Below are positions 331 to 55,660 of a stretch of 55,660 bases of DNA, one piece after another; positions within the stretch are counted from its first letter, which is position 1; the number at the start of each line of letters is the position of its first letter. The notes beneath the pieces are model-generated. The model was not told the DNA's origin. It was given only the letters and a program-made list of their open reading frames with translations, and ran no database searches. Origin of the DNA: Octopus bimaculoides (taxonomy: Eukaryota); the NCBI RefSeq assembly GCF_001194135.2, contig NC_068990.1, positions 89,029,228-89,084,887 of the forward strand, read 5' to 3'. The translations under genes were made by a program, and so were the position numbers.

Positions 331-1447
331 CATATATTGTTGTGACTTACATTATTGACAAATAATACATTGCTGGGTGGATGGGAGAAGGAATAATAAT
401 AATAACCTTATCACAGAAAGATAGATTTTTCAATGAAAGTGACTTAGCAAAATACGCGTAGATGTTATTTTTTGTTTGTTTTTGCATTTTGTTTTTTTTT
501 AATTTTATTTGTTATTCTAACTTTGTACTGACAGCAAGAGAAGTAGATATAAACAAAGAACTGAAATAAAATGAAACAATCGTGGTTGGCAAACAACTTA
601 GATTGAGCTTTGTTATTGAAAGCTGTAATGATGATGGTGGAGGTGATGGTGATGGTCATTGTGATGATGGTGGTGGTGAGTAGGTAACGAAAAGTGTAGT
701 ATTTTTTTATTTTAACTGAACTAATTTTTTTATATCGCTTCTGCATATGCACAAGTGCGGTTATTTACTGTCTGCTCGCTTGAAAATAGGTATTTGTTTA
801 TAAAATATGGATGACATATGATATAAGTTAACAACAGAAAGATTAAAACGGAATAAGCAATGATATAAAGAGAAACAGAGGGTCGAATCACTAAAACAAG
901 CACGGGATCATCATTGTGTTGAAGGGAAAATATGAATCAAAGAGTATAGAGTGAGTATTTACAAGAAATAAGGGAACGAGTTCAAGATAGAATATGAAAT
1001 AAAAATGAGAGAGAACGTCAAAAAACTGAAAGGTGCTTTTAAATAAAGATGATGCAGAATATACAATTTATAAAGGAATACTAAATTCTGTGACTCTATA
1101 TAAACTTATAATCATCAAAAGAATCTCATATTTACCATGGAGTTGCTACTGCAAGTATATATTTAACTAGCACCACCTTCAAATTCACAGTCATCACCAC
1201 CAACACTATCATCACCACCAACACTATCATCACCACCAACACTATCATCACCATCATCTCCATCGCTACTATAACCATCACTTCATCACCGTCACTACCA
1301 TTAATACAACTGCTATCATACCATCGTCATTATCATCACTCTTTCTATCTTCACCATCTCATTATTTCAGTGAGAGAAAGAGAGAAAGAGAGAGAGAGAA
1401 GCTGGAATGAGACGAAGATAAAGAAGTATGCGTTTAGTTATACTCAC

Positions 1448-1607
1448 AAATAAACAACTAATATCATCTGGGAATTCAGTGGCAAAAAATATCATAACTG
1501 CGGTATTGGTTGTAGCACAACCCAAAGATTCTAAAGCTCTCACAATGAAACTTAGTATGATGAACACCATATTATAAGAACCCTGGTTAGGGATGTATTT
1601 AAGCAAT
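1448..1607 (-). CDS. SLC18B1: Gene B coding exon 4 (160 nt)
   Basis: CATCAG|A TTG... to TTT|GTGAGT; LLKYIPNQGSYNMVFIILSFIVRALESLGCATTNTAVMIFFATEFPDDISCLF; 19/53 residues identical to gene A exon 4, including EFPDDIS. Confidence 0.9.
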
Positions 1608-4117
1608 CTGATGAGAGAGATATATACAAATATTAATAATGGTTTCTAACAACAGTGCAATTTTCATAGTGAGAACAGTCGAAAACAGGAAACTCGAGTA
1701 TATATTTTGTCAGTAAGAAAACAATAAAAGCAAATGAAATAGTAATAAAAATAAATATAATTATATTTTAGTCATGAGGAAAAGAAAAATTATATTTCGA
1801 ATTTAAGTTCTTTCTGTTTTTTAGTTTACCCAGTGGCTCCCTAGGGCCGGATTTATAGGGGTGTGGAGGGGGCAATTGCTCGGGCATCTTAGGTATTAGG
1901 GACCCCTGCTAGGAAAGGTATGTAACACTCAATACGGGAAGCCTCCCCCACCACCTTCCAGCAATCAGGCATGATGAGGCACACTCATTATACAAAAGTA
2001 TCTTGACTTCTAAAAAAATGTAATGGATTCTCTTTTATGATAAATACCCATAGATTTTTTCCACTTTAGAGATACCAAATAATTCAATTAAAAAAACTTT
2101 ACTAAATAATTCAATTAAAAAACAATTTATTGCCAGTCCCAAAGCACTTACAATTTCCGAGAAAATTGTAGCTGCTTTTGGAACAACAGAGAAAATGGAA
2201 AGACCAGAACACTCCTGAAAATGTATGTATGTATGTATGCATGCATGCGTGTATGTATGTATGTATGTATGTATGTATGTACGTATGTATGTATGTATGT
2301 ATGTATGTATGTATGTATGTATGTATGTATGTATGTATCTGTGAGTGTATGTGTGTTTGTGTAAGTATAAATGTATATAAAGAAATTTTCCTCAAATTTG
2401 ATATTTAACAAAATATCTGGATAATTTTTTGGCGAACAAGCTATGGTGAAGAAGCTATAAAAAATATTTTACGTTGAGATTTTAGATTTAGTTAGGTATC
2501 ATTAATTTCATATCGTATGCTATTTTTCCACAATCCTCTTTCATTTGACCAAGATATTTTAAATTTTGTTGCACATCTGATGTCTAAGAATGGCTGTATA
2601 CGCGTGTGACTTTTTTTTTAAACTTAACTCTGGAGAACTGGAAGGACATATTACTTTGTCTTGTCTTACCCATTTCCCCCCGCCTAAATTTGTCTTTTAT
2701 ATGCTCAAAGAGAACAGTGATAATTTTCTGAAATAGTGTTCTGAATATGTTGTAGGCTTTACTGCGTTTAGAGAAGATTTTTACTTCGCAAAAATAACAA
2801 ACAATACGACAATATGAAACAATTCTGAACAAATCTCACTTACCCCAAAAAAACTGTGTTCATGGCAGAAAATGCTGTTGCAACATATAAGATATGTCTT
2901 AATTCAAAATGATAGAGCTGTAAGAAATAAACAGACAAGACTTAGTTTCAATTGCGAATGAGTCCTGCTGATTTGTCAGCATATTTTAGAAAAAGATCCC
3001 ATCACTTTCAAATGAAACTTGGACAAATTTCTTCAAGGGATAACAGATAATCTGCCTACGCTCGAATACATGTCAGTCAACAGCAACTCTTAACTTGATT
3101 TTAAAATGACTTAACAAATCCTAACAGGTGGTACTACTAAAGTTAGATATGGCTTGGGCCAATATTTGGTCGAAGTATATCTAAGACATCTAAGTTATAT
3201 AGGAGATGCGATCCCTAAGTCTTCTGGTAGGTAGCGCCTCATTATAGTATGGGGCCGCCGCGTCGAAGGCTTCTTGGTTAGAGGAAAGGTTTGAAATCCT
3301 TTTGCTAATACCCTTTACCAGGTTCCTGAACACGATGGGTGGGCGACAGGATGCTGTGTTGGTGTATGTTTGCCTCTCGTTCGGTTTGTGGTAAGGCCTG
3401 TGAGTACCGGAGCCCAAGTCCAGCGTGACGTCTAAGAAGTACGCAGTGGTGAGGTTGGTTTCTAAGGTGATCTTCAACCCCATAGCGGCAAGCGTGCTGA
3501 TTAATTCCTTCCTAAGTCTATTTAGTGTGTGGCTGCTTGCTCCCTTAGAGATGACCAGGGCGTCATCTCTGTATAGGTCAAAGAAGACATAGGGGATCTT
3601 TTCCTAAGGGTATCCAGGATGTACAGCCTTATGAGGTCGCACATGTCGTAGGCTCCCATCGCTACGTCAAAGGAGCGTGTGGGGTCGGATTGCTTGACCC
3701 ATGCCGAACTTTTGTTAAATAGTACTGTCTTCCTGACAAGGATAATAATTTCTACATTTCTATCGCTAAAGCTAGTGAAGACCCTAGCGAAAGAAAGCGC
3801 TTTGGTCAGTAGCCCTTTTGATATAGACGCGTAAAAGTCGACTATATCAAATTGGGTGAAACTTGTCCTGCCTCTACCCTTGTTGACGTTAAACCATGCC
3901 TTCACTTCACTGGTGCTGCGTCAAAAGAAAGGGTTGGTGGCCCCTACATGAACGGGACGAAACGCTGCAAGCTATGCATAGCTGAACGCACGAGAATCCT
4001 AAAATTCGATAAAGAGAACCAGGCACTATACTTAACTCCAGAACGGAGATTTTCGGGCTATGTTTGCATTTTAGGAAATTTCTGTTGGCATTTTAGGAAC
4101 CGCAAGTTGGTAGCTAA

Positions 4118-4170
<53 letters not shown>

Positions 4171-7100
4171 AAAATTGAGTTGGCTTACCATTTTTTTGAC
4201 CATTTGTGGACCCAATACATTCATGAGTGGATAAACACCAAACAGCAAGCTGATTAAAGTATTGTTCATTCCATGACGTTTAGCCTGCAGGAAAAAAAAT
4301 ATCCATTTCGTTCATTAAATCTGATCAGTCATAGAAGTGTAAAGGTGCATTATTGTAGGGACAAGTCGACGTATTTTGTAGGAAGAATACAGTCGTTTAA
4401 CTGAGACCCTAGTGCTTGACTAGAACTGATTTTATTCATATCCATAGAATGAAAGACAAATTCCTCTACTAAAGACAGCCAATCTGTCTGCCTTTTTAAC
4501 ATACACCACTCTTTTCTTAATCCCAATAACAACTGCAACTGAGCAAGAGATTAAGCGAAGGTAAACCGAGTTCGTGACACGGTTTGCACTCTTAGTTGAT
4601 GTATTTCGCTTATCCCAACAAATGCTATTGAGAAAGGCTTAGGAGTTACATAATCTAATATTTTATAGTAAATTGACGATCATTCTCTCAAATCAAAAAT
4701 TAATATTTTCGTCATTAATCACAGGTGGAAAGCTACAAATCCGAAATCAAAAGATCATTCTAGGTCTTAGTTGCAGTGCCTTGAACGGTGGAGTTGTCAG
4801 AAATAGCACTCAATATTTAGTTATGTCTATTTAGGTTCTGTGTTCAAAGCTCACTTGTAATTGGCACAACTTTTCACCCATCCAGGGTTTCTATACAATA
4901 GATGTAATAGTTATATACTGAAGTCAACAGGGCCCAACCAAATAAGTTTCCCTTCAAGTTTAATCACTATAGTTTGTGTTTCGTTTGAAATCAATATTTC
5001 GTTTTTTTTAAATATGGTCATCACCACTGTATGAAATGTTTTCGGTTCCTGTCAGCGCGCTCCTGAGATTTAGGTTCAATTCCTAGTTGCGTCTATTTTA
5101 CTTTACTTCTCCAACATCGTTAATGTCCAAGAGAAGGACATAAATATCACTCTATTTTATATTTGTTCTGCTTTTAACTTTTCTAGCTGATGTTCGCTCG
5201 ATTCTCCCATAAAATTAGTAAACTTGTTTCAAATCTGCTTCATTTTAGTTTTTTTAATACATGTATAAAAATGTAAGAATGTTTAATTTAAGCCATAATA
5301 AACAGATGAAACATGTAAATCGCATACTAAAGTAGAATTTGACTCTTGTAGATCACGTTGGTTACGTAGATCGCATACCAAAGTAGCACCCAAAATTTAA
5401 TTTTGTTTTCTCTTTTTATACCTTTCATTTTCGCATTAATTCCTCCAAAACAAGAGTTGAACACATTGCTATAAGCTGTGGGAAAAAAAACATTTGTCAA
5501 CACTTGTGGTGCTGCTACTGATTCTAAATAGCATGAAGTTGCTTCCATTCTTGATAACTATTCTCAGCTTCCTGAAAAATAAACACTCCTAACCTCTCTT
5601 CAAGATCACAATCATCAATCTACAAAGTCTCATTGTGTTTGAATAGTTTCACAAGTATCCGGTTGGTTCGTAAGTATCGGTTGCAAATATTAGACTTAAT
5701 AAATCCGCGATCTATGGTGAAAATAGATTTTTATCAGTGTTAAGTGATTTCACAACACTGTGACCAACTGCTTCTGTGAATGTACGTTGAAAACTATTGT
5801 CTGATATGATATTTGGTGAGAATAAAATATATTGACCAAAGAACACAACAGTGTTGATCGAACCAGTGAGGGAGCTACATTCAGAACAACAATCTCTAAT
5901 GTGCCTGCGCCCTTTTAAAGTCGGACGCAATCGGTGAAGCTTCGGCTCGGCAACGGAATACGGTGATCGATTCAGCCAACTGTTGTACGCTCTCTCCTCG
6001 ATAGTTGTCAGAGAAGACTTCAAAGTGCAACGATCAACATGAGTGTAGTTGTTCCTTTGCAGCTGACAACGGTTTGGCCGTTCAGCGGGTACGACCTCAA
6101 CTACGAACATGAATGCGAGCTGAGAACGAAGCTTGGGCACCACCAGGAGCACGATCACGGCCATGAGCATGGCCACGAATACGGCCGAGAAGACGGCCGC
6201 GAAGGCGACCGCGAAGGCGACCGCGAAGGCGACCGCGAAGGCGACCGCGAAGGCGACCGCGAAGGCGACCGCGAAGGCGACCGCGAAGGCGACCGCGAAG
6301 GCGACCGCGAAGGCGACCGCGAAGATGGCCACAATCACAACGCCGAATGCCCGGTAGCTGGCGAGAAACGTATAGCACAAACATTCACACTCGCACTGGA
6401 ATTGTCGGCCGACATGCAGCTCGCCAACAAGCGGACTGAATCGGTGGAGCTTCCGCTAGGCGGGGGAGTACAGCGATCGATGAGGTTTCAGAGAAATTTG
6501 GAGTCATTTGTAGAGGGTCATGTGATCATAGATTATTGCGACTGAAATACATTTCACCATAGGTCTGCTGAATCAGGATTGACTTGGAGCTTGACTACGG
6601 CAGCAACAACTCAGTGCCGGTGATGGAACGTGAATAGCTCTCTTCTTCACTGGCTATTTCAGTTATTTAATCCCAGTTCAGCTCAGATTCGATAGAGCAA
6701 TGACCGAAAGTCTTTCAACCATTACCAACACACCTTTTTTTTCCAGACAGTGAGTCAAGAACTACATTATCCAAAACATCCTTTCTTGATGTTGTAATTA
6801 TTTTTGCTGTTGTTTAACCCCGGTTAATTCTTTGACGCAGTAGATCAAAACTGTTCTAACTGTAGCCATCACAGCTTTTATTCAGAAATGTTTTTTTTTT
6901 TCTGTCTGAATAAAAGATATAAGGATATCCAATATATCCTTACATCTTTTTTTCTCAAGATAATACGAGGGTCGGCTGAAAAGTTCATAGGCTGACCAAG
7001 ATACTCGCATGGAATGTGACCAAATGAGGTTTCTTCCATCAGTGTTACAGTGCTTGGATGCCATTGAAGAACCTTTCATCTGTTAGTCAAAAAAGTTGGC

Positions 7101-8657
7101 AGCAGCAGACATGACGTCGTCATCATTACTGCAATATTGGTTTCCAACCAAGTGCTTTTTTTTTTTCATATTGGGGAACAGATGATAAGTCAGATGGGGC
7201 CAAATCATAAGAATAAGAAAGCCGATCAACCAGGTCAAAGCCACAGTCACGTACAGCACCCATTGAAACCACGTACTTGTGTGCTGGAGCATTGACATGG
7301 GGAAGCAAGACCTCTTTCTTCAGTTTTTCTGGCTATTAGGTCTTGATAGCTTTTCGTAACTGCTTCAGCAAGTTGGCATAGTACTTTTCTTTGATGGTGT
7401 GGCCCTTTAGAAGACAGTCAATAAACACAATGCCTTTTGCATCCTCAAAATCTGATGCCATCATCTTCCCTGCAGATGAAACAACCTTGGCCATTTTAGG
7501 AACAGGTGAGGAGGGATGTTTTCACTGCACAGATTATCTCTCTGTCTCTGGCTCAAAGTAATGAAGCCAACACTCATACTGGGTTAGGAAACGTTTAAGA
7601 AAACCAGCTGGATCTGCCTCAAACAATGTCAGATTTTCCCGTGACGTGATCAGCCTGGTGTACTTTTGATCATGTGTCAGAAGACACTTCGTCCAACCAA
7701 GTCATACCAAGTTTTGTAGAATATTCTCAATTCTCTCACAGCATATGTTAATAGCATTGATTATTTGATTCATAGTTAATTACCTGTCATCCATCACCGT
7801 GTGGGGAACACGATCAATGTTTTCCTCAGTGGAGGCAGTTGCTAGACGTCCAGACCTTGGTTCATCTTCAAGAATGTCCCTTCTCCTCTTAAATTCAGCT
7901 GCTCCCTTTTGCACTGGTTGCTACATTAGGGGAGCATCATCCCCTAATGTAGCAACTATGTCAGCATGAATGCTGTTAGGGACAAAATCCTTTTCCTGCA
8001 GGTACTTGATAACACCACAATGCCAAATTGTGTCCATTTTCAAGAGAAGTTGCAACTAGTTACTTTTGAAGCAGTCAAATGTCTTGAGCTGTGGGGTGTC
8101 AGTTTATCCGGGAAAAAATAAAGCAGTTATTAAGAATTGAAATCAATGCATGCAAGATTTCACAACTCAAGCATCACGCCTTCATAGTTAGCCAATGAAC
8201 TTTTTTAGCCCACCCTCATAGAGTATGACTTCAGGCACTTGTGGTTACTATTAGTAATAGAACACCAGACCATATAAATATATGCATTTGGGGCAGGTTG
8301 TCCAGAATATCGACGACACATTCTTGACTGATTGTCCTGTACACTATAATTTCTGACATCGTCTTCATAGTCACTACTATTAAGAGAGAAAACACATTTA
8401 GGAGCAATTATTTAGAGAATGAATATACAGTGAGAGAATGAAGATATTTTAATAAGGTTACCTACCTCAACTGGATAGTTAACTTCTAGTAGAGGGAACA
8501 CCGAAGCAGATATCAAACGAGATAGCAACAGTGCCGTTATAAGCAATTTTTGTCGAGAAGCAATTTTCTTTGGTGAGTCAGATATTTCGTTGGTTGCTGA
8601 ATCATTATTGTCTGGTACCTCCTCCGGATTCCTCATGATCTCCATATTGCTACACAT
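1448..8657 (-). CDS. SLC18B1: Gene B: diverged SLC18B1-like MFS transporter, 5' part (4 coding exons; continues beyond the left edge)
   Basis: Exons 8657-8466, 4284-4189, 2917-2844 and 1607-1448 have GT-AG boundaries and splice in frame. Internal exon sizes (96, 74, 160 nt) and phases are identical to gene A exons 2-4. Confidence 0.85.
2221..2337. repeat. (TATG)n microsatellite
   Basis: Directly visible tetranucleotide array with a few interruptions. Confidence 0.95.
2844..2917 (-). CDS. SLC18B1: Gene B coding exon 3 (74 nt)
   Basis: TTTCTTACAG|CTC... to TTG GG|GTAAGT; LYHFELRHILYVATAFSAMNTVFLG; same size and phase (0 to 2) as gene A exon 3. Confidence 0.8.
3190..3916 (-). mobile_element. 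Penelope-like element, reverse transcriptase fragment (frameshifted)
   Basis: Motifs FDIVDFYASIS, FDVAMGAYD, YRDD, FLDVTLDL and PYHKPN, typical of Penelope RT, across ORFs 3522-3905 and 3190-3483. Confidence 0.9.
3918..4119 (+). mobile_element. Penelope-like element, C-terminal GIY-YIG region, inverted relative to the adjacent RT piece
   Basis: PYMNGTKRCKLCIAERTRIL matches the Cys-containing C-terminus of Penelope endonucleases; followed by (TA)n. Confidence 0.75.
4121..4168. repeat. (TA)24 microsatellite
   Basis: Directly visible. Confidence 0.95.
4189..4284 (-). CDS. SLC18B1: Gene B coding exon 2 (96 nt)
   Basis: TTTTCCTGCAG|GCT... to ATG|GTAAGC; AKRHGMNNTLISLLFGVYPLMNVLGPQMVKKM; same size and phase as gene A exon 2. 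Confidence 0.85.
5712..6545. other. GC/CpG-rich island with overlapping long open frames on both strands; product unknown
   Basis: Minus frame open from about 6460 to 5712 (about 250 codons, hydrophobic (AVAF)n stretch); plus ORF 6039-6545 (His-rich, then (REGD)n). No recognisable domain. Confidence 0.4.
6198..6317. repeat. Perfect 12-bp minisatellite (CGCGAAGGCGAC)x10
   Basis: Ten identical units counted; degenerate units with the same 12-nt period flank both sides. Confidence 0.95.
6966..8218 (-). mobile_element. Full-length decayed mariner transposon (about 1.25 kb)
   Basis: Imperfect TIRs (CGAGGGTCGGCTGAAAAGTTCAT on the left; reverse complement TGAGGGTGGGCTAAAAAAGTTCAT on the right), each flanked by TA. 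Transposase remnants GVIKYLQEK, EDEPRSGR and YSYDLAPSD (YSPDLAPSD motif) with stops and frameshifts. Confidence 0.92.
8466..8657 (-). CDS. SLC18B1: Gene B coding exon 1 (192 nt)
   Basis: ATG at 8657 (AAAAATGT); ends ...LEVNYPVE|GTAGGT at the position where gene A ends APFFPKE|GT. Confidence 0.8.
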
Positions 8658-8661
8658 TTTA

Positions 8662-8670
8662 CTCTCTGTT

Positions 8671-8747
<77 letters not shown>

Positions 8748-9150
8748 TTCTCACTCTCTCTCGTTCTCACTCTTTCTCTTTATCGCTCTCTCTCTCTCTC
8801 TGTCTCCCTCGTTCTTTCTTTTTCTCTTGCTCTGCCCCCTTCTTTCACTGTACCTCAATCATACTGTCTCTACTCACAGTCCCACTATTGCACTGTCCCC
8901 TTTCTCACTGTTCCCCTTTCTCACTCTCCTTCCCTCTCTGGCATTGAACTTTTCTGTTGTTGCATCCCCTTTCACTACCTCTCTCTCTCACTATTCCCAC
9001 ACTCACACTGTTCCCTTCTCTCACTGTCCTTTTCTCTCACTATCTTACTGTACCGTTCTTTCGCTGTTTGCTTCTTTCACTAACCCTCTCTTAATTCCCC
9101 CTCTCCCACTATAGCCTTACATGTCCTCCTCTCACTCCCACACTTACTCA
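8662..9150. repeat. (TC)n array followed by about 400 bp of pyrimidine-rich low-complexity sequence
   Basis: Near-pure TC at 8675-8741, then degenerate CACTGTTCCCCTTTCT-like units. Confidence 0.9.
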
Positions 9151-9539: not shown

Positions 9540-11110
9540 AAGTTCTCTAAATATAAATTCCCTTCCAAAAACAACTTTCCCAAACTATAAAACGGATCAC
9601 TTCATCACCTAAATTGTTGCACGTCTTCTCAGATAAAATGGAAATTATGTATCCTATTACTATCGAGGAATACACCAAAATCATCAAGTAGGAACTATAC
9701 AAGTCTTATAAGCTGGCACCGACATCTGCTCTTGACAATATCGACACCAACCAATGCAAGCTTATGAACAAATTATACGTGGACGATCGCACAGAATCCT
9801 ACTCCTCTACATCTCCACATTTCAACCTTAAGGATCATAAGAAAGACTTCATAACTAAGCCCATCTATACGCCTCATATACTTTACCAAATCCGACCTGG
9901 GAAGAATACGCAAAAATATTCTATATAAAATAATACCAATCGTCAGGGAGAAATTGTACCTCAACTTATGATCCTGTACAGGTGAAGTCATAACATGGTT
10001 CCATCTCTTAAACAACAAAAACTCTTCTTTCCTACAATTCGATATAAATAATTACTATTCTTCTATTTCTCCCAAACTTCTTAATCAAGCTCTCCTTCTA
10101 GCTAGGAATCTAACTAACCTAACCCCACTATAAATTAACATAATTCTTAATGCCCGTAAAAACCTTGTTTCTTTTGAGGACAAACTTTGGTACCGGGTTG
10201 ATCGCTATAACAATAACTATAACAAATTATTTAACATTACTATGGGATCATCCGACTCTGCCCAAGTCACCGAGCTCGTTGGACTATACATACTCTACCA
10301 GTTCCGAATACATTTCCTTAACATCAAGGGAGGCCTCTACAGAGATGACACTTAGCTAGTCACCAAGGGCGTTAATAAATCCACTTTAGAACGAGTTAGG
10401 AAAGATCTATACAATTTTTTTTTCTAACCTCAACCTATCTATTACTTTTGAAAATTCTCACAAAAAAATATTTTTAGACGTAACTTTAAACTTAGAAACC
10501 TCCCAATACTCCTCATATCGCGAACCTAACCAACACCTTAAGTACTTAAACATTAATTCCAATCACAACAAATCCATCTTTGATAATATAGTTAAGGGTA
10601 TCTCGATTCGTATATCTGACCCCTCATCCACTCAGGAAATATTCAATAACTACGTTCCATATTACAACCAAGCGCTTACTGCCAGCGGCTTCTCCCAACA
10701 AATAAAATACATCTCTAATACTAGACTCAAGCTACATATATCTCAAATTATATCACAACGACATGCTAACCATCAGAATCACAACAGACCACACAGACTA
10801 TACTAGTACCCCGGGAGAACCCAGATTAAGACAACTTAGACCCCACACGCACAAATATAACACTAGGTCAAAAGCTAGAACAACTAACAATAACAGGCCA
10901 TATTATGCCCCTCTAATTTCTAAAAATATAGATTATACTCCCTCTAAGCAATCAAAAAAGTAGTCGACGCTCTATTCTATAGTATACACCACCCCCGCCT
11001 TCTCACTAAACGTTAAGACCTTAGTTAAATATTTTTTTAATATACAAGACTCCATCTTCCTGCGTCAGCATAAATATTACTTTATCTCTAATAAATCTAT
11101 TTTAACGCAT
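9540..11110 (+). mobile_element. Penelope-like element, long decayed RT region
   Basis: Translates to LKDHKKDF, FLQFDINNYYSSIS, FNITMGSSDSAQVTELVGLYIL, GLYRDD, FLDVTLNL and PYYNQAL, with stops and frameshifts. Confidence 0.9.
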
Positions 11111-11319
11111 TTCCTTCCTGATATCTTTTAGGGAGTGTTTGTTGCCTGAGTAGCTCAAAAGGAGAAATATCGTCACTTATGATGGTAGTACCCGGTCTTA
11201 TATTATCTTCTATTATTGAAAGAAGTTTTGCCGCAGACCTGTCGGGGACAATAAACGTGAAACACTCTTAGCGTCTACTTACTTCCTCCACAACACTAAT
11301 CTCAAAAAGTCTTCTTTGG

Positions 11320-12062
11320 ACGTGACCTTGGCGTTGTTGTTGACAGCGATTTGCGTTGGACAAAACACATTGCTAAAATTGCCAAGAAGGCTGAGGGTAT
11401 CTTGGCATCACTTACCAAGTCCTTTGTGAGCCGCTCTCCGGCTATCTATCTGAGGCTTTATATAGCTATGGTGCGGTCTCACCTGGAATTTGCATCACCG
11501 GTCTGGAACCCCTATCTTGCCCCGGATATTAATTGTCTGGAAGCCGTTCAGCGATGTGCAACCAAGAGAATACCCTCCATCAGGCATTTGCCATATTCTG
11601 AACGCTTTACTTCTCTGAGCATGGATACATTGAAACTCCAACGTCTAGCAACTGACTTGGAAGACACCCATAAAATTATTAACCATCTTACTAACTATAA
11701 CTCTGAGCACCTTTTCAAACACCACCTGTCTAACACCTGTGGGCATGTTTACAAAGTCAGAAAACAGCACAGCTCCCATGACTTTCAGAAACACTTTTTC
11801 CCGCTAAGAGTTGCTGAAGTATGGAACAAACTACCAGCATCAGTTGTTAGTTGTCGGAGGACTGCATCCTTCAAAACTTCCATGCTTCCTGAGATTCGCC
11901 AACACTACACCTGATTTTCTCCCCTCCATACACATGCAAGCATGGATCTGACTCATACACTGTTCACTTTCCAGACATTTGTACATTACTGCATATGCTT
12001 TATACGCACTTTTGACAAGTTGAAGTGCACCTGAGCACTGTATACAATAATTTCATTATTTT
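11320..12062 (+). mobile_element. CR1-clade LINE 3' fragment (ORF2 C-terminus and 3' UTR)
   Basis: RDLGVVVDSDLRW, MVRSHLEFASPVWNP, LEAVQRCATK, GHVYKV and FFPLRVAEVWNKLP. Confidence 0.92.
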
Positions 12063-15290: not shown

Positions 15291-16348
15291 CTGATTGTAG
15301 AAAATCAAATGACTGGTTGGTTTGTAGAAGTAAGTTGCAAATTATCAAGTCATTAAAGTTGGGCAGATGGATCTATGATACACAAATGGGGAATGTCATC
15401 TTTCTCCAAGGTAAAGACATCATGCTCAAATACACTACACCCAGCAATTTTCTCTTTTTATATTTTGTGCATGCGAGTGTGATAATGATTATGTACAACA
15501 TCTTTCTCTCTATATTTAACTTTTATCAAGGCCAAATTCCATTTTAATATTGTTACTAAATTGTTGTTATTATTATCATTGTTATTGGCAGAATTGTTAG
15601 TATGCCAGAAAATATATATATATATATACAAGGTATTGAAGGCCAATCTAAAAAAATGCTGAAACTTATGAAGAAGATGACAGAGAACTGAGATATGTGG
15701 CACATTGCTGTACTCTAGAAGACCCACCCACCAAAATAGAGTTGAGATTCTAAAACCAAGGTGCCGCATAAAAGCATTAGTGTGAGTGCTAGTGCCACAT
15801 AGATAGCAGTGGTGTTGGTGCTCCATAAAAAGCATGGGTGACGGTATCACACACAAAGCACCCAGTACAATCTGTAAAGTGGTTGGCATTAGGAAGGATA
15901 TCCAACCATAGAAACCAAGCTAAAACAGACTATGGAGCCTGGTATGACCTCTAGCCTTGTCAGTTCCTGTCAAGCAGTCTAACCCATGCCAGCCTGAAAA
16001 ACAGACGTTAAATGTTGATGGTGATGATATATACACACATGAAAATGATACATGCACACAGGCATGGACACACACACATACATACATACATACAAACAAC
16101 AAAAATATGAATGGAGAAAATTATATCTTTAATTTGTGGCTCCACCATACGATGCCAACAATCAATTCTGGTGTATCAACATATAAAGATACAGAAAATA
16201 TCAGTCAAATAAATATATCCAAAATACATGTTAATACATTACCAAGGCAATCCAAAATTGCATTTTCCACAATTGTATCACTTTGTACTCTTTTAACACT
16301 GAGTGCTTTACTGATATCTGCGTCCTCGATGTTTTAATCCCTTTTTCT

Positions 16349-18888: not shown

Positions 18889-47153
<28,265 letters not shown>

Positions 47154-49226: not shown

Positions 49227-49974
49227 TAATATTGACAATGCTAAGGTTTTGTTATACATCAAGTACAACCTTAACAAAAACTTATTCTACCTGAACAAAA
49301 GAAAAAGAAAATAATTGAAATAAATGGTTATAAATAAAACTGCATAGTCATTCTATGTTACATCGCCTCAGATGTTAAATAGGAACCGCATCACAAGAGA
49401 TGTCAAACACAACAAACAATTATGTGGAAGGGACAAAAAATTTTTAAAAAATGGAATATAATGATATAAAGTATTAATTATTTTATTTTAGATGAAACAA
49501 ATTTAAGAACTTCTGTTGTGTGTTTTATTGGTGACAGGAAGAGGAGTACATTCCATGACCTTCACATATAAGCCCCACCACCCACCTCTGAGTGGTGAGA
49601 ATGGTGTGAAATGAGTAACACTCAGTTTGAGCATCTGTAAGTCAATATATCTATTTTCCCCCAAAATTAAGTGGATGCTAAATCAAATGAATTATAAATA
49701 TGATACAGAATCCAAAAGCAGGCCTCTCATCTTTAATTCAACATCAGTTAAGTCATTTGAATTTGAAAGGGCATCCAGCTGTAGAAACCATGCCAGGACA
49801 GACATGTAGCCTGAACAGCCCTTCAGTTGGCCGGTTCCTGTCAAACCATACAACCCATGCCAGCATGGAAAGTGGATGTTAAATGATGACAATGATAACG
49901 ATAATGATGTATTAATATATTTTATATATTATTATGATGAATTAATGATAATTTTTAATTTTGGTACATGGAAG

Positions 49975-53714: not shown

Positions 53715-55500
53715 ACTTCAATTGGTTGCACACCACAAGGTTCGACGGAACTTACTGAAGCAAGTCAACATGCTCATGGCATTACCATGGGTGATAGCGA
53801 GGCTAAGGCGTTGAAACAGCCAAGCACCTTCATGGGCATCATCTGACACCTCGGTAAGGCGAGCCGCCAACAACGACAAGAACTTCGGCGTTAGCGGCTC
53901 AACCCCCTTCCAAACGTCTCAAATGACACAGGCTGGAAGAGATGGTTCACTGACAGGTCTCAATACTTAAAAATTTTGTTCCGTTCAGCTACGGAAGCAG
54001 TGGTCCTCCCATTTACGCAGCATCCAGGATGTGGGAGGGACAAAAGGAATCACAGACTGTGGCATCCCAGATGAGGCACCTACCTCTTGCCCAGGAAAAA
54101 ATGGGTAAGATCATTTGGACTCTTCACATCACTTCTGGATAATCCCGCCAGCTCCAGTTCTGAGGGGATATTAACCCGAGACAGGGCCCGCTAAATGATC
54201 AAGTTTAGCTCGGTGTGACGAGCGAAGTGATCGGCATTTAGGCGGCAAAACAAACCGTGAAAACCTGTGGATTCAAGGGGCCTACCACAGCAACATCTCA
54301 GTCCCCTACAGACGTCGGCTCCCATTCTGAGTGCGATGGAAATGCGGAGCTCATCTAGACTGAGTAGACCACCAATGTGTCTAGAATTTTTCACAAGCAG
54401 GAAGTAGGCGGCACCTTGAAAATTGATCAGGTTGATCAAAGAGAGAGTCGAAAGTGACACTTGAGCGCAGATTGTCCCATACTCTCTGCTTTTGTCTATC
54501 CTCAATTGTAACAGGAACTGACAAACCCAGCTCTCTCCACTGTAACAGAACTTCATCCATCTCCTTGTTGGAACTAGTTCATGTTGGAGAGAAAGCAAAA
54601 CAGGGAAGAGATAGAGATATAAGCACTACGCAAACCTAGGCCCCCAAACCGTTTGGGCAAAGCATCCTGGTCGTGGGACTCTGGAGAGAATCTGACAATG
54701 ACCAAGCTTTCGAGTTTCCTGAAGATTGGATCATCAAAGCATCGGAGAGATGACAAGAATCTATAAGGACTAACTCTGAGAAAATACAATTTAGGAATCG
54801 ACAAGTAATTCCTAAGTATTAAAAAATCTTGGTTGGCCTCAATTACCTCAAAGTTTTTTAGAAGTTACTCAAGGTTAACCATCTTGAGTCGAAAGATGGA
54901 CTCGGAAGCTCGGTCGGTAATTTGGGGCTCCAACGGAGCACCATGCTGATGAAGGAGGAACCGCGATAGAAGGGAAGGAGTCTGTAAACAAGTTTACAGT
55001 CTGCTGATGTGAAACTGGATGGCTAAGGAGCCAGAGCACACATTTGAAACTGTTACGGTTAAGCCCCCTACGACCAAGTTCCTCAATCATCGTCCTCGCA
55101 GTTGCAAGGACTTTGTCGGGGGGGAGAGCCTACCCCACCAAAACAAGCATCGTAGAGATACCAGACATTCAAGTCTAGGTCAGCTCCCGTCGTGGTAACA
55201 TCATCATTACCCAGTGCAAACAGAGCAGGCCCAAGTGGGTCACCTTATTGGACTCCAGAGGCAGATAGGATGAGGTGGTCACCAAAAGAGAGGTAAGAGG
55301 GCTTCTGATAAGCTTGAGAGATGTGGGGCATTCTCCCTTACTACCCGGAGGGTGACATCCCGACTGATGGAACTGAAGGCATTCCTAAAGTCTAGTTTGA
55401 GGATGACCTTTTGGGGCTGAGAGAGTAAGTTGGTAAAAGCTCTAGTGGCATGAGATGAGCAGCACCCTCACAACCTAGCTTAGCACCCAAGAAGTTGGGG
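53715..55500 (-). mobile_element. CRE-clade non-LTR retrotransposon, 5'-truncated and decayed (RT, Cys/His knuckle, restriction-like endonuclease)
   Basis: KLDFRNAFSSI, GVQ*GDPLGPALF, LNVWYLYD, LPKRFGGLGLRSA, RISIALRMGADVC...CCCGRPLESTGFHGLFC...RHTELN, LIWDATV, FETFG and LFQRLSLAITHGNA, in collinear order. Confidence 0.85.
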
Positions 55501-55660
55501 AAAATTCGTTTTTTCTTTTTTTTTTTTTGTAGATTTATAGCTCGAAACATCAACATTTTGTAATGTTTCGACAAAATGTCATTTAAAGATATGCATGTTA
55601 AAGAGATTTATGAGGAAACAAATTCGGGAAGAGGAAGAATGATCTGAAACTCCTCCAATT

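What the first reader, a model, noticed from the sequence alone, without database searches (positions are those of the whole stretch)
5712..6545. Unexplained CpG-rich island with a perfect 12-bp array and long open frames on both strands
Seen: an abrupt GC- and CpG-rich block in AT-rich intron DNA. Ten identical CGCGAAGGCGAC units (three CpGs each, none decayed) grade at both sides into degenerate 12-nt units. The plus frame reads HQEHDHGHEHGHEYGREDG(REGD)10REDGHNHN (His-rich, highly charged). The antisense frame reads a long hydrophobic (AVAF)n helix ending in VIVLLVVPKLRSQ, then about 130 more stop-free codons with several Cys, well beyond the repeat. A third frame gives (KATA)n. No transposon protein motif, TIR or poly(A) is recognisable. 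Inference: a recently inserted foreign or mobile coding fragment (viral, retrocopy, or a LINE 5' region with monomer repeats), or a nested orphan gene whose repeat is expanding from a His-Gly loop or membrane helix. The long repeat-independent opening favours the minus frame.
Basis: partly seen in the sequence, partly recalled or inferred. Interest (0 to 1): 0.7.

Follow-up and report, generated by a model that had tools for sequence, protein, structure and literature searches.

The report
Intronic CpG island with young minisatellite
A 620-base CpG-rich block inside the first intron of a transporter gene carries a recently expanded 12-base tandem repeat, and its long open reading frames look like by-products of the repeat rather than a gene, so it is most likely an ordinary non-coding minisatellite in an orphan CpG island.

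Summary
Positions 6198-6317 hold ten identical CGCGAAGGCGAC units, flanked by degenerate 12-nt units (6137-6352). They sit in a 620-nt block (5881-6500) with GC 0.58 and CpG o/e 1.41, in a window with GC 0.36 and CpG o/e 0.37. Long frames are open on both strands, in one shared triplet register.

- A significant 50-nt direct repeat brackets the array (5922-5971 and 6432-6481).
- A marginal 14-nt inverted repeat lies at 5709/6565.
- The block lies in intron 1 of a minus-strand MFS-type transporter paralogue (exon 1 at 8466-8657, exon 2 at 4189-4284), next to a mariner remnant.

Neither frame has a homologue outside the repeat in 5.8 billion clusters, 1.8 billion representatives (minus frame only), PDB, Pfam, PHROGs, viral contigs or bacterial genomes. 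The DNA matches no plasmid or phage. There is no codon periodicity and no confident fold.

The His-rich edges largely follow from transitions in the REGD unit, many at CpG sites. The two 50-nt repeats differ at 22% of sites yet keep their CpGs. That points to a long-unmethylated island rather than a recent insert.

One point is unexplained. The open frames are longer than shuffles give (P about 0.002-0.008).

Verdict: a non-coding minisatellite in an orphan intragenic CpG island. A nested orphan gene is not excluded. Interest is low.

The parts
5881..6500 (.). CpG-rich block (sequence-defined CpG island): 620 nt, GC 0.58, CpG o/e 1.41, 72 CpGs
6197..6316 (.). Perfect array: 10 identical 12-nt units CCGCGAAGGCGA, with no T on the plus strand
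6137..6196 (.). Left degenerate 12-nt units (5 units, 5/12 to 9/12 identical to the core). Plus frame reads HQEHDHGHEHGHEYGREDG.
6317..6352 (.). Right degenerate 12-nt units (9/12, 6/12, 7/12 identical to the core)
5922..5971 (+). Direct repeat copy 1 (50 nt, 8 CpGs)
   Evidence: (78% identity, E 2e-8, spacing 510)
6432..6481 (+). Direct repeat copy 2 (50 nt, 6 CpGs). A weaker continuation at 6483-6495 matches 6003-6015.
5709..5722 (.). Left arm of a marginal 14-nt inverted repeat (13/14)
   Evidence: E 0.17, no target-site duplication
6552..6565 (.). Right arm of the marginal 14-nt inverted repeat
5715..6455 (-). Stop-to-stop open frame, 247 codons: (AVAF)n hydrophobic run, then 147 non-repeat codons. 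The first ATG lies after the array. No coding evidence beyond its length.
5967..6542 (+). Stop-to-stop open frame, 192 codons (ATG at 6039): His-rich stretch, (REGD)10, then a 67-codon tail. It uses the same triplet register as the minus frame.
8466..8657 (-). Context: exon 1 of host gene B (MFS-type paralogue). ATG follows a (GA)n tract; donor is GAG|GTAGGT.
4189..4284 (-). Context: exon 2 of host gene B. It has 32 codons like exon 2 of paralogue A, a strong acceptor and a GTAAGC donor. Intron 1 (4285-8465) contains the block.

Best explanation
The feature is a non-coding, GC-rich minisatellite inside a small orphan CpG island. It lies in intron 1 of a minus-strand MFS-type transporter gene.

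Shown:
- An older, degenerate 12-nt periodic stretch (6137-6352) contains ten identical copies of one variant unit.
- The edge units on both sides share the older state (A at unit position 9, G at position 12).
- The block keeps its CpGs although the surrounding intron and a neighbouring mariner copy have lost theirs.
- The block carries an internal 50-nt duplication 510 nt apart that has diverged by 22%.

Inferred mechanism:
- One interior variant unit was amplified recently by replication slippage or unequal exchange/gene conversion, as in other minisatellites.
- The island has been shielded from germline CpG methylation for a long time, like orphan CpG islands that act as unannotated promoters or enhancers. 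That is why CpGs persist while other substitutions have accumulated.
- The long open frames are by-products. The unit has no stop in any of the six frames, the block is GC-rich, and the two long frames are exact antisense partners, so depletion of stops in one tends to open the other.
- The His-rich and hydrophobic peptides are largely what transitions in the unit (CGC to CAC/CAT) translate into.

Whether the block arose in place or came in as part of a repeat family cannot be decided here.
For: - Array anatomy and the shared older state of both edges.
- Among 29 differences between six edge units and the core, 21 are transitions, 9 of them at core CpG sites.
- CpG o/e is 1.14-1.21 in the non-repeat parts of the block. 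It is 0.40-0.57 in the flanks, 0.32 in the adjacent mariner remnant and 0.37 window-wide.
- The 50-nt direct repeats match at E 2e-8 and differ at 11 sites. Only 3 of these are of CpG<->TpG/CpA type, and 8 and 6 CpGs are retained.
- All six frames are open over the perfect array.
- No homologue of the minus non-repeat part in 5.8 billion clusters or 1.84 billion representatives. The only two hits there are multi-stretch matches to repetitive proteins. PDB gives none.
- The plus frame matches only low-complexity RE/RD/GD runs.
- Pfam gives nothing above cut-off and Rfam nothing.
- There is no codon-position asymmetry in 5715-6136 (chi-square p 0.47), against p 0.005-0.04 for exons and transposon frames of this window.
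- AlphaFold2 single-sequence mean pLDDT is 38.
- L+S+R make up 30% of residues, about what I would expect from random translation (the expectation is my own knowledge).
- Intronic position: B1+B2 against A1+A2 gives BLASTP E 4e-8; the B2 candidate is a clear outlier (score 32 against 13 for the next distinct candidate); splice sites are good.
Against: - The open frames through the array are longer than block-wise dinucleotide-preserving shuffles give. The minus frame (247 codons) has P 0.005-0.008, the plus frame (192 codons) P 0.001-0.005, and their sum P about 0.001 or less.
- In 5715-6136 the minus-strand stop triplets number 0 in register against 10 and 6 out of register. This is what a coding history would leave.
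- The periodicity test has limited power: 17% of random 422-nt windows reach p<0.05.
- Methylation state, transcription and repeat-number polymorphism could not be tested.
- No second copy or orthologous locus was available, and the protein collections appear not to contain this genome. The lack of homologues is therefore weaker evidence than the numbers suggest.
- The array does not fold into hairpins better than shuffles, so no special slippage-prone structure is shown.
Confidence: 0.6

Rival explanations
1. Fragment or full copy of a non-autonomous repeat (a MITE-like DNA element, or 1.1-1.2 monomers of a roughly 510-bp satellite) with an internal minisatellite. It inserted into the intron, and its CpGs survive because the copy is young.
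For: - The compositional edges are abrupt.
- A 13/14 inverted repeat at 5709-5722 / 6552-6565 encloses the block and both open frames.
- The 50-nt direct repeat spaced 510 nt apart looks like the start of a second monomer.
- The intron is full of other transposon remnants.
- The less decayed RT-like remnant nearby (CpG o/e 0.80) shows that CpG content tracks the age of inserts here.
Against: - The inverted repeat is marginal (E 0.17). It lies in AT-rich, CpG-poor sequence 160 nt and 50 nt outside the GC block, with no target-site duplication and no 8-mer direct repeat at the edges.
- There is no second copy in 55.6 kb.
- No transposase, RT or other element protein is present.
- The internal repeats have diverged by 22% with CpGs kept. 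That does not fit a young methylated insert unless the divergence predates insertion.
Confidence: 0.2
2. Nested lineage-restricted gene, or alternative first exon, on the minus strand (the same strand as the host gene). The CpG island is its promoter and leader, and the array lies in the leader or an N-terminal hydrophobic extension. Translation from the first ATG would give about 150 residues with a hydrophobic start (MLMAVIVLLVVPK...) and five cysteines.
For: - The minus frame has 247 stop-free codons, with P 0.005-0.008 against shuffles.
- There are 0 in-register stop triplets against 10 and 6 in the other phases over 422 nt, including 55 codons in AT-rich sequence.
- The frame has the same orientation as the host gene.
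- A CpG island is a plausible promoter (sequence criteria met).
Against: - No homologue turned up in any protein resource searched, not even a distant one.
- There is no codon-position asymmetry (p 0.47).
- The amino-acid make-up is that of random translation.
- pLDDT is 38.
- No ATG precedes the array in this frame, and by eye there is no good splice donor or canonical AATAAA downstream.
- The frame crosses the compositional boundary at 5881 without any change in its properties.
- It does not fit host exon phases.
Confidence: 0.12
3. Plus-strand gene for a His-rich, highly charged (REGD)n protein (ATG at 6039, 168 residues).
For: - An ATG-initiated frame with A at -3.
- 192 stop-free codons, which as the second-longest frame exceeds shuffles (P 0.001-0.005).
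- T is under-represented at codon position 1 (0.12-0.18).
Against: - Taken alone, the right-hand extension is what chance gives (P 0.50).
- All database matches fall on the low-complexity run only. The 67-residue tail finds nothing in bacterial genomes.
- The His-rich part largely follows from transitions in REGD units.
- The frame is the exact antisense partner of the minus frame, so the two signals are not independent.
Confidence: 0.04
4. Foreign DNA: a viral or bacterial insert, a contaminant or an assembly chimera.
For: GC 0.58-0.75 and an undepleted CpG content resemble bacterial DNA more than the host intron.
Against: - No match in plasmids or phages by DNA, or in viral contigs or 185,579 bacterial/archaeal genomes by protein.
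- The single metagenome hit is a 34-nt chance match in a 68% GC contig.
- The block is only 620 nt and grades into host-like sequence.
- There are no N gaps nearby; the nearest is at 27380.
Confidence: 0.03

Closest known systems
GC-rich minisatellites / VNTRs (Jeffreys-type tandem arrays with units of about 10-60 nt; own knowledge)
   Same: A head-to-tail 12-nt unit with about 13-18 copies in register. It is GC-rich with strong strand asymmetry (no T on one strand). The centre is homogenised and variant units lie at both edges. The location is intronic.
   Different: Length polymorphism and a link to a recombination hotspot, which characterise classical minisatellites, are untested. The array sits inside a CpG island and keeps every CpG.
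Orphan / intragenic CpG islands (Illingworth et al. 2010, PMC2944787; review PMC8873577)
   Same: It meets the sequence criteria (over 200 nt, GC over 0.5, CpG o/e over 0.6). It lies within a gene, in the first intron about 2 kb from exon 1, away from the recognisable start of the host gene. CpGs are kept although the block's internal duplicates have diverged.
   Different: Those islands are defined experimentally by lack of methylation, and many by transcription initiation. Neither is known here. They were described in mammals, and the source organism of this window is unknown.
Non-autonomous DNA transposons (MITE-like elements) with internal tandem repeats (own knowledge)
   Same: About 857 nt lie between short inverted repeats, with an internal minisatellite and no coding capacity recognisable by homology.
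   Different: The inverted repeat is only 14 nt (13/14) and statistically marginal. There is no target-site duplication and no second copy in the window.
Monomer arrays in LINE 5' regions, such as mouse L1 monomers of about 200 nt (own knowledge)
   Same: CpG-rich tandem units with promoter-like composition.
   Different: The unit here is 12 nt. No ORF1/ORF2 follows on either strand. The nearest RT remnant is separated from the block by a host exon.
Long antisense open frames and de novo ORFs in GC-rich or repeat DNA (own knowledge)
   Same: Two long frames lie in exact antisense register across a stop-free repeat, with no homologues.
   Different: No expression or translation evidence exists to call it a de novo gene.

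Membership tests
Minisatellite / VNTR | Head-to-tail units of about 10-100 nt in several copies | tested here: met
   TRF finds period 12, 13.3 copies, score 152. Ten copies are perfect.
Minisatellite / VNTR | Variant units interspersed or at the edges of a homogenised core | tested here: met
   Edge units fall from 9/12 to 5/12 identity. Both edges share A at position 9 and G at position 12.
Minisatellite / VNTR | Repeat-number variation among individuals | not testable with these tools
   Only one haplotype is available.
CpG island (sequence definition) | At least 200 nt, GC at least 0.5, CpG observed/expected at least 0.6 | tested here: met
   5881-6500 is 620 nt with GC 0.58 and o/e 1.41. 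Outside the array the values are 1.21 and 1.14.
Orphan CpG island (functional definition) | Unmethylated in germline or soma | not testable with these tools
   Indirect only: the internal 50-nt repeats are 22% diverged, with few CpG-type transitions and 8 and 6 CpGs kept.
Orphan CpG island (functional definition) | Transcription initiation or regulatory chromatin marks | not testable with these tools
   No expression data. The bacterial-type promoter scan is irrelevant here.
Protein-coding gene (nested or orphan) | Open frame longer than composition explains | tested here: met
   P 0.005-0.008 for the minus frame and 0.001-0.005 for the plus frame. Selection bias is not corrected.
Protein-coding gene (nested or orphan) | Homologues or a known domain outside the low-complexity run | tested here: not met
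Protein-coding gene (nested or orphan) | Codon-position (3-nt) compositional periodicity | tested here: not met
   5715-6136 gives p 0.47 and 6353-6542 gives p 0.11. Exons and transposon frames in the window give p 0.005-0.04. The test has low specificity.
Protein-coding gene (nested or orphan) | Confidently predicted fold | tested here: not met
   Mean pLDDT 38, pTM 0.27, single sequence. This is weak evidence, because orphan proteins often score low.
Exon of the host MFS gene | Similarity to paralogue exons, and splice sites in the right phase | tested here: not met
   Exon 1 and exon 2 of gene B are found elsewhere, at 8466-8657 and 4189-4284. Candidates inside the block score 12 or less against 32 for the true exon 2.
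DNA transposon / MITE | Terminal inverted repeats | tested here: inconclusive
   13/14 at 5709-5722 / 6552-6565, E 0.17.
DNA transposon / MITE | Target-site duplication | tested here: not met
   No direct repeat of 8 nt or more at the edges. By eye, only a possible TA on each side if the repeat is trimmed to 8 nt.
DNA transposon / MITE | Multiple dispersed copies | tested here: inconclusive
   None in this 55.6-kb window. The source genome is not available.
LINE 5' region with monomers | Downstream ORF1/ORF2 (endonuclease, RT) on the same strand | tested here: not met
   No such frames adjoin the block on either strand. Host exon 2 lies between the block and the RT-like remnant.
Viral or other foreign insert | Sequence relatives in viral, phage, plasmid or prokaryotic collections | tested here: not met
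   The single metagenome hit is a chance match.
Structured non-coding RNA | Match to an RNA family, or a fold more stable than shuffles | tested here: not met
   Rfam gives no match even at E up to 1, and no tRNA is found. The array folds worse than shuffles, and the two 50-nt repeats share no structure.

The most novel reading that the evidence does not exclude
The block is the promoter, leader and single coding exon of a lineage-restricted gene nested in intron 1 of the transporter gene, on the same strand. An expanding 12-nt VNTR lies in its leader or N-terminal hydrophobic segment. The product would be about 150 residues with a signal-anchor-like start and five cysteines. It would be a young de novo or fast-evolving gene whose repeat number could vary among individuals.
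Probability: 0.1. Interest if true: 0.4.

Novelty: new member of a known kind. Interest (0 to 1): 0.15.

Why it matters
If the main reading holds, this is routine genome texture. It is a useful example of how a stop-free GC-rich repeat creates impressive but empty open frames on both strands, and of how transitions in the repeat unit, many at CpG sites, can mimic a 'His-rich' protein motif.

It would matter modestly in two ways. The array could serve as a polymorphic marker. The block could also be an unannotated regulatory element or alternative promoter in the first intron of a transporter paralogue.

It would matter more if the minus frame turned out to be translated, as a case of a young nested gene with an expanding repeat.

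Tried and rejected
1. Promoter and first exon of the host paralogue. Rejected: exon 1 of gene B is at 8466-8657, with its own ATG and a consensus donor. Exon 2 is at 4189-4284. The block lies between them.

2. Exon 2 candidates at 5438-5527 and 4898-4963. Rejected for wrong phase or missing splice sites.

3. A three-unit, roughly 190-nt higher-order repeat suggested by recurring GAAGCTT. Rejected: only the 50-nt pair is significant.

4. Part of the RT-like element at 3150-4050, as the LINE 5' end on the minus strand. Rejected: a host exon and AT-rich DNA without frames lie between them.

5. Pol III or tRNA-derived element. ARAGORN and Rfam are negative.

6. Hairpin-prone repeat or structured RNA. 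Folding is no better than shuffles.

7. The metagenome hit L009 is a chance 34-nt match in a bacterial contig.

8. The exhaustive-search hits P0016 and P0017 are artefacts of summed matches to internally repetitive proteins.

9. Exact look-up of both ORFs in public assemblies found nothing on record.

10. A protein search with host exon 1 to name the organism found nothing. The source organism stays unidentified.

Full report
**Observation**

- Positions 6197-6316 are ten identical CCGCGAAGGCGA units.
- Tandem Repeats Finder reports a period-12 array over 6171-6330. The repeat finder follows the 12-nt register over 6137-6364.
- Unit by unit, identity to the core falls from 9/12 to 5/12 on the left (6185 back to 6137). 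On the right it is 9/12, 6/12 and 7/12 (6317-6352).
- GC reaches 0.60-0.65, against 0.357 for the window.
- CpG observed/expected is 1.41 in 6001-6500, against 0.37 for the window. This is the only 500-nt bin above 1.0.

- It runs from 5881 to 6500: 620 nt, GC 0.58, 72 CpGs.
- CpG o/e is 1.21 and 1.14 in its two non-repeat parts.
- 5709-5880 and 6501-6565 are AT-rich and CpG-poor like the rest of the intron.

All quoted translations are correct.
- Stop to stop, the minus frame is open over 5715-6455 (247 codons). The plus frame is open over 5967-6542 (192 codons).
- All six frames are open across the perfect array.
- The two long frames occupy the same triplets, each the exact antisense of the other. 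This follows from the coordinates: 6039 minus 5712 is a multiple of 3.

- A 50-nt direct repeat brackets the array, at 5922-5971 and 6432-6481. It is 78% identical, with E 2e-8 and start-to-start spacing of 510 nt. A weaker continuation links 6003-6015 with 6483-6495.
- A 14-nt inverted repeat (13/14) lies at 5709-5722 / 6552-6565. It encloses the block and both frames. It is statistically marginal (E 0.17 in a search space of a few hundred bases) and lies in the AT-rich flanks. It has no target-site duplication.
- No other copy of any part of 5600-6650 exists in the window.

**Genomic context**

The window carries two tandem paralogous MFS-type transporter genes on the minus strand.
- Gene A has exons at 46911-47150, 38805-38900 and about 34895-35044, and a late exon within 21455-21652.
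- Its first two exons, joined as they stand, match the N-terminus of Pfam MFS_1. E is 5.7e-7 at 29 bits, below the 33.4-bit cut-off, as expected for a fragment.
- Gene B has exon 1 at 8466-8657. Its ATG follows a (GA)n tract and its donor is GAG|GTAGGT.
- Gene B exon 2 is at 4189-4284. It has 32 codons exactly like A's exon 2, the acceptor ttttttttcctgcag and the donor gtaagc. It scored 32, against 13 for the next distinct site among 105 phase-compatible candidates.
- A third exon lies around 1445-1600 and is 38-42% identical to A's.
- B1+B2 against A1+A2 gives BLASTP E 4e-8 across the exon junction.

The block therefore lies in intron 1 of gene B (4285-8465), about 2 kb downstream of the exon-1 donor. 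It is not that gene's promoter or an exon.

Its neighbours are transposon remnants.
- A mariner-type copy lies on the minus strand at about 6965-8250 (Pfam Transposase_1, E 1.1e-10). Its CpG o/e is 0.32.
- An RT-like remnant lies at about 3150-4050 in intron 2. Its CpG o/e is 0.80.

**Is it coding?**

Evidence against:
- The 147-residue non-repeat part of the minus frame has no match in the 5.8-billion-cluster search.
- It has none in PDB, viral contigs or bacterial/archaeal genomes.
- The exhaustive HMMER scan of 1.84 billion representatives returned two hits at E 8e-5 and 2e-4. Both are sums of five weak stretches on internally repetitive proteins, which is an artefact.
- The plus frame matches only low-complexity RE/GD/RD runs, including the RD repeat of NELF-E in PDB. 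Its 67-residue tail finds nothing in bacterial/archaeal genomes.
- Pfam gives nothing above cut-off.
- Codon-position composition is flat in 5715-6136 (chi-square p 0.47). The host exons and transposon frames of this window give p 0.005-0.04. This test is not very specific.
- A single-sequence AlphaFold2 model has mean pLDDT 38.
- Leu+Ser+Arg make up 30% of the minus-frame residues, about what I would expect from random translation (the expectation is my own knowledge).

Evidence in favour:
- With the periodic core held fixed and the flanks shuffled block-wise with dinucleotides preserved, the longest frame through the core averages 153 codons. It reaches 247 in only 0.5-0.8% of trials.
- The second-longest frame reaches 192 in 0.1-0.5% of trials.
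- In 5715-6136 the minus-strand stop triplets number 0 in register, against 10 and 6 in the other phases.

This excess is real and I cannot explain it away. However, the region was chosen for its long frames, the two frames are not independent, and the excess stands alone.

**What the repeat and the CpGs say**

- Both edges of the array share an older unit state (A at position 9, G at position 12). The ten perfect units carry the derived state. One interior variant unit was therefore amplified inside an older array.
- Of 29 differences between six edge units and the core, 21 are transitions, and 9 of these sit at the core's CpG sites.
- In the plus frame these changes turn CGC (Arg) into CAC/CAT (His). 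In the minus frame they exchange one hydrophobic residue for another.
- The 'His-rich loop' and the 'membrane helix' thus largely read as the translated record of transitions in the repeat unit. They are not evidence of a protein.

The two 50-nt direct repeats bear on the age of the block.
- They differ at 11 sites: 6 transitions and 5 transversions. Only 3 are of the CpG<->TpG/CpA type.
- The copies still hold 8 and 6 CpGs.
- In a methylated sequence, CpG transitions would dominate and the CpGs would be largely gone at 22% divergence. This is an inference from the known hypermutability of methylated CpG.
- If the duplication happened in place, the block has evolved for a long time without methylation-driven decay. 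That is the behaviour of a true CpG island, not of a recent insert.
- The alternative is that the divergence predates insertion from a source element. This cannot be excluded without the genome.

**Other readings tested**

- Foreign DNA: there is no DNA match in plasmids or phages. No protein relative appears in viral or prokaryotic collections.
- The single metagenome hit to the conserved core of the 50-nt repeat is a 34-nt chance match in a 68% GC contig.
- The nearest assembly gaps are 21 kb away.
- LINE 5' region: no adjoining ORF1/ORF2 exists, and a host exon separates the block from the RT remnant.
- Structured RNA: Rfam is empty even at E up to 1 and no tRNA is found. The array folds worse than shuffles, and the two 50-nt repeats share no fold.

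**Conclusion**

The best-supported reading is a non-coding GC-rich minisatellite that recently amplified one variant unit, by slippage or unequal exchange (inferred). It is embedded in a small intragenic CpG island that has probably stayed unmethylated (inferred). The open frames on both strands are by-products.

The block fits the sequence definition of a CpG island and the anatomy of a minisatellite. It resembles orphan intragenic CpG islands (PMC2944787, PMC8873577), whose functional definition could not be tested here.

Two alternatives remain open:
- A repeat-family fragment, at about 0.2.
- A nested orphan gene on the minus strand, at about 0.1.

Descriptive data would settle the matter: copy number in the source genome, stranded expression and footprints, methylation, spanning reads and repeat genotypes.

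Overall interest is low.

Noticed in passing
window 21455-47150 (gene A) and 1445-8657 (gene B), minus strand: Two tandem, strongly diverged paralogues (31-42% identity in shared exons) of an MFS-type transporter. Gene B probably continues beyond the window start. B1+B2 alone gets no Pfam hit, so B could be a fast-evolving copy or a pseudogene.
   Followed up: partly
window about 6965-8250, minus strand: Mariner-type DNA transposon remnant of roughly full element length (Pfam Transposase_1, E 1.1e-10). It is CpG-depleted (o/e 0.32). Its transposase frame is interrupted several times by stops and frame changes, which I did not count exactly.
   Followed up: partly
window about 3150-4050 (minus strand) and about 10390-11911 (plus strand): Remnants of an RT-bearing retroelement family (weak RVT_1, E 0.009). 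The first sits in intron 2 of gene B, has at least one frameshift and is less CpG-decayed (o/e 0.80) than its surroundings, which suggests a younger insertion.
   Followed up: partly
window 15840-16050, 20860-21070, 26760-26950, 34420-34570, 38340-38410, 42580-42680, 43140-43320 (possibly also 49700-49900): A short interspersed repeat present at least seven times in both orientations. It shows up as recurrent tblastx matches (a further copy near 49700-49900 is suggested by an ORF peptide only). It is the dominant repeat of this window. ARAGORN finds no tRNA gene in it.
   Followed up: no
window 8662-9041: A long (CT/GA)n and C/T-rich low-complexity tract directly upstream, in gene sense, of gene B's start codon. 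It could be a GAGA-type promoter region.
   Followed up: no
window 27380-27462 and 28118-28127: Runs of N (assembly gaps).
   Followed up: no
window 54194-55600, minus strand: A block that is GC-rich (0.51) but CpG-poor (o/e 0.31), with several open frames of 60-144 codons that look retroelement-derived. It contrasts with the CpG-rich block studied here.
   Followed up: no
window 5438-5491, minus strand: A 54-nt stretch with a strong polypyrimidine/AG acceptor and a GTATAA donor. It is out of phase with gene B's exon 1 and runs into a stop. It could be a decoy or cryptic exon 350 nt downstream of the block.
   Followed up: partly
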